Of a DNA stretch of 64,000 nucleotides, positions 37,251 through 38,076 are shown one piece after another. Each line of letters starts with the position of its first letter. The first letter of the stretch is position 1. The notes under the pieces are model-generated. The model made no database searches. It worked only from the letters and a program-made list of their open reading frames with translations, and had not been told where the DNA came from. A program made the position numbers and the translations under genes. This DNA is from Octopus bimaculoides. Its lineage: Eukaryota. Location: positions 2,791,094 through 2,855,093 of the forward strand of contig NC_069000.1 in NCBI RefSeq assembly GCF_001194135.2, given 5' to 3'.

Positions 37251-37726
37251 ACAGAGAGAGTTTCATGGAGTTATAAATACCTAGACATATAAATGTTTCT
37301 GTACTTTTATACTATACATAGAAATGCTGCCTCTGTGGTTGTGAAACATTTTGGGGGAAATTTTATTATTATAAGTATTGATTAACTAATATATGAATAT
37401 GTGAATATACTGTATACTTCCCGGATACTTTACAATTTGTTTCCATCTTTATAGGAATATAAATTCAAAAATCCATTTAATTCATATATTTCAGTTATAT
37501 TATTATTGGAATTCAAAGAGAATTTATTGTATATACAGTATCGATATATATATGTGTGTTTGTGTGTGCTTCTGTGTGTGTGTGTGTGAAAGAGCGTGTG
37601 TGCTGTTTCTCCCCTACCATCACTAAACCGGTGTTTTTTGTTTGCATCCACGTAACTTGTCAGTTCGACGTAGAGGGGAATAAAAATAGTACGAGACATG
37701 CAAAAAATAAGTTCTCAGGTTGATTT

Positions 37727-37928
37727 ACATTATTTGCATTATTTACAGTTGACGGATATTTGTCCTCATCTTGCTTGTTTTTAACACAACTTTCTCCAAG
37801 ACACCTGATGAAGGCTGGAGGGTATATATCAACCGAAACGTTGTGTTAACAAACAAGAATAGGACAAATATCCGTGAAATGTAAATAATGTACATAATTC
37901 CTCCTCTCTTAAATATAGAACTGTATCA
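37727..37928 (+). mobile_element. Penelope-like/retrozyme-like non-autonomous foldback element with a 12-bp TSD
   Basis: TCAGGTTGATTT at 37715-37726 and 37929-37940; inverted arms 37737-37794 and 37835-37890; hammerhead core between them. Confidence 0.75.
37800..37847 (+). ncRNA. Minimal type-I hammerhead ribozyme motif
   Basis: Stem I GACAC/GTGTT, CTGATGA (37805-37811), one extra A, stem II GGCTG/CAACC with one mismatch, GAAAC (37835-37839), palindromic loopless stem III ACGT, cleavage triplet GTT (37840-37842). Confidence 0.65.
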
Positions 37929-38076
37929 TCAGGTTGATTTGCTCGATGAAATCATTCAAGAAGGTGTCCCAGCGCGGTTGTTATATCCAATGATTGAAAC
38001 AAGTAAAAAATATAGGACATGGTCGTCGTGTCTGACATACTTTTTGATGATACACAAGAAACACCACCAGAAACCT

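What the first reader, a model, noticed from the sequence alone, without database searches (positions are those of the whole stretch)
37715..37940. 202-bp foldback retro-insertion with 12-bp TSD: retrozyme-like / Penelope-derived mini-element
Seen: TCAGGTTGATTT is duplicated on both sides and the host SINE is restored when the insert is removed. The insert has ~55-bp inverted arms (CATTATTTACAGTTGACGGATATTTGTCCTCATC…TTAACACAAC versus GTTGTGTTAAC…AGGACAAATATCCGTGAAATGTAAATAATG) around a hammerhead core and has no ORF. Established: Penelope-like elements carry hammerheads in their pseudo-LTRs and often show inverted 5' ends; metazoan retrozymes are small non-coding hammerhead-bearing retroelements. 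Inference: a non-autonomous ribozyme-carrying mobile RNA family in octopus, mobilised in trans. The antisense arm includes the complement of GAAA.GTTGTGTT, so the foldback would mask the ribozyme.
Basis: partly seen in the sequence, partly recalled or inferred. Interest (0 to 1): 0.85.

Follow-up and report, generated by a model that had tools for sequence, protein, structure and literature searches.

The report
Truncated head-to-head Penelope-like element insertion
The 202-bp foldback is most likely an ordinary dead fragment of a Penelope-like retrotransposon (two short copies of its ribozyme-bearing 3' end joined head to head) that landed in a SINE, with no evidence that it is a new kind of ribozyme-carrying mobile RNA.

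Summary
A 12-bp direct repeat (37715-37726 and 37929-37940) flanks a 202-bp insert. Removing the insert and one repeat restores the host SINE. The insert has imperfect inverted arms of 66 and 64 nt (84% alike) and a hammerhead motif.

[quoted passage not shown] Rfam's canonical hammerhead models miss it.

Six PLE insertions whose ends I measured in other animals (a seventh, Amphiura, also carries mirrored copies), each next to a reverse-transcriptase ORF, are built the same way:
- Two copies sit head to head and share their outer 3' ends.
- The cleavage site lies 49-65 nt from that end (56 nt here).
- A 26-37 nt tail is present at one end only (30 nt here).
- The target-site duplication is 12 bp in all three measurable cases (12 bp here).

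The foldback is therefore best read as a by-product of PLE integration, with both copies severely 5'-truncated. The window holds no second copy, no tandem array and no PLE coding remnant. The retrozyme-like family reading is unsupported, but I could not test it genome-wide. This is ordinary and of low interest.

The parts
37553..38006 (-). Host SINE copy, with its (CA)n tail reading as (TG)n at 37553-37592 on the + strand. It is interrupted by the insertion.
   Evidence: Alignment with paralogous SINE copies at 8900-9250, 36650-37000, 11900-12200 and 38040-38300.
37715..37726 (.). Left copy of the 12-bp target-site duplication, TCAGGTTGATTT.
   Evidence: Exact direct repeat D5. The empty site is restored in the SINE alignment.
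37727..37728 (.). Two nucleotides (AC) between the duplication and the inverted arm. They are untemplated filler or a mutated element end.
   Evidence: They are not complementary to 37899-37900.
37729..37794 (-). Inverted, 5'-truncated copy of the PLE 3' end. It reaches inward only as far as the complement of the GAAA box, so it carries no complete hammerhead.
   Evidence: Aligns with the reverse complement of 37835-37898, 56 of 67 columns identical. Same head-to-head layout as L001-L004, L007 and L008.
37795..37898 (+). Sense, 5'-truncated copy of the PLE 3' end (about 104 nt). It contains the hammerhead and 56 nt downstream of the cleavage site. The exact inner junction is uncertain within 37795-37799.
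   Evidence: The distance from cleavage site to arm end is 56 nt here, against 49-65 nt in six PLE loci.
37800..37847 (+). PLE-type minimal type-I hammerhead. Helix I is GACAC (37800-04) with GUGUU (37843-47). CUGAUGA is at 37805-11. An extra A is at 37812. Helix II is 37813-37834 (GGCUG...CAACC, with one C.A mismatch). GAA is at 37835-37. The ACGU palindrome is at 37838-41. U17 is at 37842, and the predicted cleavage is after 37842.
   Evidence: Descriptor scan: 1 hit in the window, 0 in 300 shuffles. Model R1, built from PLE hammerheads of other animals: 31.9 bits, E = 2e-6, the only significant hit in the window.
37899..37928 (+). [quoted passage not shown] It is probably the extreme 3' extension of the element.
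   Evidence: It has no partner in the left arm. One-sided tails of 26, 34, 37 and 31 nt occur in L001, L002, L004 and L008, and are homologous between related families. A 30-40 bp tail is described in PMC8557442.
37929..37940 (.). Right copy of the 12-bp target-site duplication.
   Evidence: The duplication is also 12 bp in PLE loci L001, L002 and L008.

Best explanation
This is a dead-on-arrival insertion of a Penelope-like retrotransposon (PLE) into a SINE.

**Shown.** The insert consists of two copies of one sequence placed head to head, with their shared ends pointing outward.
- The longer copy (37795-37898, + strand) carries a PLE-type minimal hammerhead 56 nt from its outer end, followed by a 30-nt tail.
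- The shorter copy (37729-37794) is the reverse complement of the last 64 nt, without the tail.
- The whole is flanked by a 12-bp target-site duplication.
- Six PLE insertions measured in other animals, each next to an RT ORF, have the same layout and nearly the same dimensions.

**Inferred mechanism.**
- The PLE GIY-YIG endonuclease nicked the two strands 12 bp apart.
- Both exposed 3' ends primed reverse transcription at the 3' end of PLE RNA. One priming event included the terminal tail and the other began about 30 nt further in.
- Both cDNAs stopped very early, after roughly 66 and 134 nt, and were joined in the middle.

On this reading the foldback is a scar of integration, not a designed structure. 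The single hammerhead is a passenger from the pseudo-LTR. It lacks a partner for the dimeric helix III and has a mismatched helix II, so it is most likely inactive.
For: **1. Hammerhead identity.**
- The motif has every feature listed for PLE minimal hammerheads in PMC4209133: a nucleotide between A9 and G10.1, a G10.1-C11.1 pair, no loop 3, palindromic 15.2/16.2 (GAAACGUU), a 5-bp helix I and a long helix II.
- A descriptor with these features hits the window once and hit none of 300 shuffled windows.
- Covariance model R1 was built from 8 hammerheads at PLE ends, with the octopus sequence excluded. It gives one significant hit in 64 kb on both strands: 37800-37847, 31.9 bits, E = 2e-6. The next best hit is 12.6 bits.
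- PLE hammerheads that were not used to build the model score 18-25 bits.

**2. Architecture, measured in PLE loci with RVT_1 and other PLE domains (GIY-YIG recorded for some of the proteins).**
- All show an inverted 5'-truncated copy next to a sense copy, with mirrored hammerheads.
- The cleavage site lies 53, 54, 65, 62, 64 and 49 nt from the arm end, against 56 nt here.
- The one-sided tail is 26, 34, 37 and 31 nt, against 30 nt here.
- The target-site duplication is 12, 12 and 12 bp, against 12 bp here.

**3. Literature.** PMC8557442 describes exactly these features for PLEs. PLEs are abundant and recently active in Octopus vulgaris, with 30 Penelope families (PMC13282606).

**4. No sign of selection on the hairpin.** The arm mismatches do not preserve RNA pairing: 1 of 7 is G.U-compatible and 5 of 7 are transversions.
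Against: - No sequence homology to an identified PLE of the same genome could be shown, because no PLE of that species was reachable. The PLE assignment rests on the hammerhead model and the architecture, not on nucleotide identity to a PLE terminus.
- There is no RT or GIY-YIG remnant anywhere in the window (tblastn with 120 PLE proteins). A parental element is therefore not in view.
- The arms are only 84% alike, whereas the fetched PLE loci have arms 98-100% alike. This needs either age (roughly 6% change per arm) or two different template RNAs. The 12-bp duplications are still perfect; the chance of that at 6% change per site over 24 bp is about 0.2.
- The sense copy starts only a few nucleotides upstream of helix I. 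That may be coincidence, or a hint of a defined short unit.
Confidence: 0.8

Rival explanations
1. The 202-bp foldback is one copy of a recurrent non-autonomous family derived from a PLE pseudo-LTR. This would be a retrozyme-like monomer or 'mini-PLE'. It would be transcribed as a highly self-paired RNA and mobilised in trans by PLE reverse transcriptase and endonuclease.
For: - Animal non-LTR retrozymes are reported to derive from PLE pseudo-LTRs and to leave dispersed monomers (bioRxiv 10.64898/2026.07.22.740005).
[quoted passage not shown] The insert is 202 nt and folds at z = -9.7.
- The sense copy begins almost exactly at the 5' edge of the hammerhead.
Against: - There is no tandem array and no other copy in 64 kb.
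- The hammerhead is the minimal PLE type, not the canonical type-I form of retrozymes. Rfam hammerhead models give no hit.
- The insert's ends are not at the ribozyme cleavage site.
- The one-sided 30-nt tail and the 56-nt distance are just what a single PLE integration produces.
- The arm mismatches do not conserve pairing.
Confidence: 0.12
2. The insert is an unrelated foldback, and the hammerhead-like boxes are a chance match. Candidates are a MITE or other DNA transposon, a LINE-mobilised hairpin RNA, or templated repair filler.
For: - CUGAUGA and GAAA are short.
- Rfam's curated hammerhead models do not recognise the motif.
- The isolated motif folds no better than shuffled sequence (-7.2 kcal/mol, z = +0.47).
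Against: - The full minimal-hammerhead descriptor gave 0 hits in 300 shuffles.
- The PLE-derived model gives E = 2e-6 and no other hit in the window.
- The inverted repeat is not terminal (offsets of 2 and 30 nt), so the insert is not a TIR element.
- There is no poly(A) or LINE-like tail.
- Four independent dimensions match PLE loci.
Confidence: 0.04
3. The hairpin has been co-opted as a small-RNA precursor or as a double-stranded-RNA (ADAR) substrate.
For: - It has a stem of about 65 bp with a very low folding energy on both strands.
- It gives weak matches to long-hairpin miRNA models.
Against: - The Rfam matches are to plant miRNA families and lie far below their gathering scores (39.6 against 139.7 bits). 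They reflect only the shape of a long hairpin.
- There are no expression or conservation data.
- The arm mismatches are not pairing-compatible.
Confidence: 0.03

Closest known systems
5'-truncated, head-to-head insertions of endonuclease-positive Penelope-like elements (Penelope/Poseidon-Neptune type), as described by Evgen'ev & Arkhipova and by Craig et al. 2021 (PMC8557442)
   Same: - An inverted 5'-truncated copy abuts a sense copy.
- A tail of about 30 nt is present at one end only.
- A hammerhead sits in the pseudo-LTR near the 3' end.
- A target-site duplication is present.
- The dimensions match six loci analysed here: cleavage site to arm end 49-65 nt, tail 26-37 nt, duplication 12 bp.
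   Different: - Both copies are extremely short (66 and about 104+30 nt), so there is no ORF and only one complete hammerhead.
- The arms are 84% alike rather than 98-100%.
- The parental family in this genome was not identified.
Minimal type-I hammerhead ribozymes of PLE pseudo-LTRs (Cervera & De la Pena 2014, PMC4209133)
   Same: - Core CUGAUGA...GAAA.
- An unpaired nucleotide after A9.
- A G10.1-C11.1 pair.
- No loop 3, and a palindromic ACGU that can form helix III only in a dimer.
- A short, open helix I.
   Different: - Helix II has a C.A mismatch and a longer loop (12 nt) than the examples used for the model.
- Only one motif is present, so no dimer partner is nearby.
- Activity was not tested.
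Metazoan non-LTR retrozymes (Cervera & de la Pena 2020, PMC7229834; Li et al. 2026 preprint)
   Same: - Small, non-coding and AT-rich.
- Carries a hammerhead.
- Strongly self-paired.
- Related to PLEs.
- The target-site duplication is longer than 4 bp.
   Different: - Not in tandem.
- A minimal rather than canonical type-I hammerhead.
- The insert ends are unrelated to the cleavage site.
- The self-pairing comes from an inverted duplication made at integration.
L1 twin-priming 5' inversions
   Same: Both target DNA ends appear to prime reverse transcription. This gives an inverted segment joined to a direct segment inside one target-site duplication.
   Different: - In twin priming the inverted part comes from a more 5' region of the RNA.
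- Here, as in PLEs, both parts are copies of the same 3' end, which produces a true foldback.

Membership tests
PLE minimal hammerhead (min-HHR) | Conserved core CUGANGA ... GAAA with U16.1 and H17 | tested here: met
   CUGAUGA at 37805-11, GAAA at 37835-38, U at 37841, U17 at 37842.
PLE minimal hammerhead (min-HHR) | Extra nucleotide between A9 and G10.1, and a G10.1-C11.1 pair | tested here: met
   A at 37812; G37813 pairs with C37834. The feature list is taken from PMC4209133.
PLE minimal hammerhead (min-HHR) | No loop 3, with palindromic 15.2/16.2 (helix III only in a dimer) | tested here: met
   ACGU at 37838-41. The same GAAACGU(C/U) occurs in L001-L004, L007b, L008 and L009.
PLE minimal hammerhead (min-HHR) | Short helix I (4-5 bp) and long helix II (6-8 bp) | tested here: inconclusive
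   Helix I is 5 bp (GACAC/GUGUU, including one G.U). Helix II is GGCUG/CAACC with one C.A mismatch. The isolated motif is not more stable than shuffled sequence.
PLE minimal hammerhead (min-HHR) | Scores against a sequence-plus-structure model of hammerheads taken from PLE ends | tested here: met
   R1 gives 31.9 bits, E = 2e-6, a full-length match and the only significant hit in the window. Out-of-sample PLE motifs score 18-25 bits.
PLE minimal hammerhead (min-HHR) | Self-cleavage (weak, and dimer-dependent in vitro) | not testable with these tools
   Needs in vitro transcription of monomer and dimer constructs.
Canonical hammerhead families in Rfam (Hammerhead_1, _3, _II, HH9, HH10) | Match to a curated covariance model | tested here: not met
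   No hammerhead hit at E <= 10 in 701 nt or in 81 nt, and none at gathering score in the whole window.
Penelope-like element insertion | RT plus GIY-YIG ORF | tested here: not met
   No coding remnant in the insert or anywhere in the window. This is expected for a fragment that retains only about 100 nt of the 3' end, so at most it is a PLE fragment.
Penelope-like element insertion | Inverted 5'-truncated copy adjacent to the sense copy (head to head, shared outer 3' ends) | tested here: met
   The same layout occurs in L001-L004, L007 and L008, with mirrored copies also in L005. Described in PMC8557442.
Penelope-like element insertion | Hammerhead near the 3' end of the pseudo-LTR | tested here: met
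   56 nt from the cleavage site to the arm end, against 49-65 nt in six loci.
Penelope-like element insertion | Tail of about 30-40 nt at one end only | tested here: met
   37899-37928 is 30 nt. Tails of 26-37 nt occur in four loci.
Penelope-like element insertion | Target-site duplication | tested here: met
   12 bp here, and 12 bp in L001, L002 and L008.
Penelope-like element insertion | Nucleotide homology to the 3' terminus of a coding PLE of the same genome | not testable with these tools
   No collection with this genome could be searched by DNA. Both metagenome scans found nothing, and the protein hits carried no species names.
Metazoan non-LTR retrozyme | Short tandem repeats (monomer 150-450 bp, dimer to multimer), each with a hammerhead | tested here: not met
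   No array with a period of about 200 bp. A single hammerhead in 64 kb.
Metazoan non-LTR retrozyme | Canonical type-I hammerhead | tested here: not met
   The motif has the minimal PLE-type architecture, and Rfam finds no hammerhead.
Metazoan non-LTR retrozyme | Expressed as circular RNA | not testable with these tools
   No transcriptome data are available here.
MITE / TIR DNA transposon | Terminal inverted repeats that directly abut the target-site duplication | tested here: not met
   The inverted repeat is offset by 2 nt on the left and 30 nt on the right.
miRNA precursor families (MIR2606, MIR4208, MIR3932) | Score at or above the Rfam gathering threshold | tested here: not met
   27-40 bits against thresholds of 140-150 bits.

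The most novel reading that the evidence does not exclude
The foldback is not a one-off. PLE integration would routinely seed the genome with short, perfect hairpins carrying a hammerhead. Some of these, including this one, would propagate as a non-autonomous 'mini-PLE' family, or would serve as raw material for hairpin small RNAs or ADAR substrates in a cephalopod genome.
Probability: 0.1. Interest if true: 0.45.

Novelty: already known. Interest (0 to 1): 0.15.

Why it matters
It matters little in itself. It is one more decayed PLE fragment in a repeat-rich genome.

Its value is as a compact, fully resolved example of the PLE integration signature in only 226 bp:
- a 12-bp target-site duplication;
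- head-to-head copies;
- a one-sided tail;
- a minimal hammerhead.

It is also a warning for annotators. Such fragments mimic MITEs, hairpin-RNA genes or 'retrozymes'.

Two side observations from the comparison loci may interest transposon specialists if they hold up in larger samples. The 'tail' is homologous between related families, so it appears to be encoded by the element. The target-site duplication was 12 bp in every measurable case.

Tried and rejected
- **Rfam.** I searched 701 nt and 81 nt at E <= 10, and the whole window at gathering score. There was no hammerhead hit, only sub-threshold long-hairpin miRNA models. These are not evidence for a miRNA.
- **Insert against the window.** BLASTN at word size 7 found no other copy.
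- **PLE coding remnants in the window.** tblastn with a composite PLE bait and with 120 database PLE proteins found nothing.
- **Metagenome scans.** I searched the arm pattern and the hammerhead pattern. Both returned 0 hits. The collection evidently lacks this genome.
- **Reaching PLEs of the same species through protein searches.** The hits carried no species names, and the window's LINE ORF has no hit closer than 64% identity. L009, the locus with the closest LINE (72% nt identity), holds a PLE with hammerheads, but it shows no similarity to the insert outside the core.
- **Supplementary PLE consensus sequences of PMC8557442.** They are not held as text.
- **MITE reading.** Rejected because the inverted repeat is not terminal.
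Rejected as a ribozyme helix. That pairing is the foldback stem and competes with helix I.
- **ARAGORN.** It found no tRNA-like SINE heads.
- **First two MAFFT alignments of the hammerheads (A1, A2).** They misplaced helix I or helix II and were not used for the model.

Full report
**1. The observation**

- TCAGGTTGATTT occurs at 37715-37726 and again at 37929-37940 (family D5). It cannot be extended on either side, and the insert between the copies is 202 bp.
- A 12-bp repeat at this spacing is not rare by itself. About ten non-simple pairs of that kind exist in the window.
- The empty-site test is decisive. The flanks belong to a SINE with several paralogs in the window. After removing the insert and one repeat copy, the host reads TCGAGC-AAATCAACCTGA-GAACTTATT, colinear with TCGAGC-AAATCGACCCCA-GGACTTATT in the copy at 8900-9250.
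- The inverted arms are 37729-37794 and 37835-37898: 56 of 67 aligned columns identical, 7 mismatches, 2 indels. They give a fold of -70.7 kcal/mol with z = -9.7.
Two nucleotides lie outside the left arm and 30 nt (37899-37928) outside the right arm.
- There is no second copy of the insert in the window, no array with a period of about 200 bp, and no ORF above 50 aa in the insert.

**2. The hammerhead**

Rfam's hammerhead models find nothing at E <= 10, in 701 nt or in 81 nt, and the whole window has no Rfam hit at gathering score. Read by hand, the motif is a type-I hammerhead of the minimal kind:

| Element | Sequence | Coordinates |
|---|---|---|
| Helix I, 5' strand | GACAC | 37800-04 |
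| Core box | CUGAUGA | 37805-11 |
| Extra nucleotide | A | 37812 |
| Helix II | GGCUG...CAACC | 37813-34 |
| Core box | GAA | 37835-37 |
| Helix III palindrome | ACGU | 37838-41 |
| Cleavage nucleotide U17 | U (cleavage after it) | 37842 |
| Helix I, 3' strand | GUGUU | 37843-47 |

- A descriptor with these traits hits the window once. It hit none of 300 first-order Markov shuffles of the window, both strands.
In the full-length fold it does displace helix I.
- The isolated motif is no more stable than shuffled sequence, and helix II has a C.A mismatch.

**3. Comparison with real PLE insertions**

- I used a composite PLE protein written from memory only as bait. It retrieved more than 6000 database proteins, the best of which carry RVT_1, DUF8422 (PF28514) and HTH_animal (PF26215) domains, and some carry GIY-YIG.
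- I fetched the DNA around eight of these proteins, from at least five assemblies including Amphiura and Branchiostoma. A ninth locus, L009, came from the closest LINE relative of the window.
- L001-L005, L007 and L008 carry mirrored copies on opposite strands; in the six measured loci (L001-L004, L007, L008) an inverted 5'-truncated copy abuts the ORF-bearing copy, so the two copies share their outer 3' ends.
- A minimal hammerhead sits shortly after the ORF stop on the sense strand and is mirrored on the other strand.

Measured values:

| Feature | PLE loci in other animals | This insert |
|---|---|---|
| Cleavage site to arm end | 53, 54, 65, 62, 64, 49 nt | 56 nt |
| Tail at one end only | 26, 34, 37, 31 nt | 30 nt |
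| Target-site duplication | 12, 12, 12 bp (the three measurable cases) | 12 bp |

Craig et al. (PMC8557442) describe the same features in words: strong 5' truncation, an adjacent inverted 5'-truncated copy, and a 30-40 bp tail at either end.

**4. An independent test of the hammerhead**

- I aligned eight hammerheads from those PLE ends, leaving the octopus sequence out (A3). I built a covariance model with helix I and helix II as 5 bp each (R1).
- Searched with filters off over the whole window, R1 gives one significant hit: 37800-37847, + strand, 31.9 bits, E about 2e-6, full model length. The next hit is 12.6 bits, E = 0.55.
- PLE-associated motifs that were not in the training set score 18.1 bits (L006), 22.3 bits (L007) and 23.6-25.1 bits (L009). 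The octopus motif is therefore a comfortable out-of-sample positive.

**5. Interpretation**

All parts of the insert are accounted for by one PLE integration in which both cDNAs were aborted early:

target-site duplication (12 bp) - AC - inverted copy (66 nt, ending inside the complement of the GAAA box) - sense copy (about 104 nt, with the hammerhead) - tail (30 nt) - target-site duplication (12 bp).

- The mechanism is inference from this anatomy and from the literature. It assumes staggered nicks 12 bp apart by the GIY-YIG endonuclease, priming from both DNA ends on the 3' end of PLE RNA, and joining in the middle. It has not been shown here.
- The arm mismatches do not preserve pairing: 1 of 7 is G.U-compatible. 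This argues against selection on the hairpin.
- If both arms were identical at insertion, 7 mismatches in 63 aligned bases correspond to a Jukes-Cantor distance of about 0.12, or about 0.06 per arm. On the calibration quoted for O. vulgaris (distance 0.09 is about 25 My; PMC13282606), that is very roughly 15-20 My. This estimate is an inference and would be wrong if two different template RNAs were used.
- PLEs are abundant and recently active in octopus genomes (PMC13282606; PMC8967140).

**6. What remains open**

- I could not show nucleotide homology between the arms or tail and a PLE of the same genome. No searchable collection contains that genome, and the protein hits carry no species names. 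For the same reason I could not verify that the window is from an octopus.
- I could not test genome-wide recurrence of the exact foldback. Dispersed monomers of PLE-derived retrozymes are reported in vertebrates (preprint 10.64898/2026.07.22.740005), so the idea is not absurd.
- The defining retrozyme features tested here are not met. There is no tandem arrangement and no canonical type-I hammerhead (PMC7229834).

**7. Verdict**

- The Penelope connection is supported.
- The 'retrozyme-like mini-element family' is not supported.
- The thing is a known kind of object: a doubly 5'-truncated, head-to-head PLE insertion with a passenger minimal hammerhead. Interest is low.

Noticed in passing
L002 1900-1933 vs L008 4536-4566; L001 3497-3520 vs L004 4973-5009: The one-sided PLE 'tails' are homologous between related families from different samples (TGCCT[G/C]AGCCAGCTGAGAAGCCC[T/C]CACTTCA, and a shared CCTAGCCAC). 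The tail therefore looks like an element-encoded 3' extension that is copied at only one of the two ends, not filler generated at integration.
   Followed up: partly
L001 3484/6311, L002 1888/4814, L008 385/4567; window 37715/37929: The target-site duplication is 12 bp in all three PLE insertions where it could be read, and in the octopus insert. This suggests a fixed 12-bp stagger for this group of PLE endonucleases.
   Followed up: partly
window 37553-38006 (-) and 38066-38267 (+): Two copies of the same SINE family lie head to head about 60 bp apart, with their (CA)n tails outward. This produces the long-range inverted repeats I2-I4.
   Followed up: partly
window 13714-13730 and 13873-13889: A 17-bp exact direct repeat (AACTTATTGATTTAATT) flanks a 142-bp segment. 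It may be another small insertion with a target-site duplication. It was not characterised.
   Followed up: no
window 45796-46599 (+): A 267-aa ORF with an RVT_1 domain (motif FMDD), a LINE-type reverse transcriptase remnant. It is 72% identical at the nucleotide level over 557 bp to a LINE in L009, and its best protein hits are 48-64% identical and unnamed.
   Followed up: partly
window 37723-37747 and 37878-37898: The outer ends of both arms consist of about 2.5 copies of a 9-nt unit (AATGTAAAT). On the left, the unit runs into the last four bases (ATTT) of the target-site duplication. This could be microhomology between the target and the element's 3' end.
   Followed up: no
L007 6509-6546 (+): A solitary PLE-type minimal hammerhead (GAAACGUU, 39.8 bits with R1) lies about 1.8 kb downstream of a full PLE. 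It has no inverted partner, so it is an example of a simple truncated copy.
   Followed up: partly
window, whole: The window has 2232 N in many short assembly gaps, almost all next to (TA)n or (CA)n microsatellites. GC content is 32%. There are no Rfam hits at gathering score and no tRNA genes.
   Followed up: no
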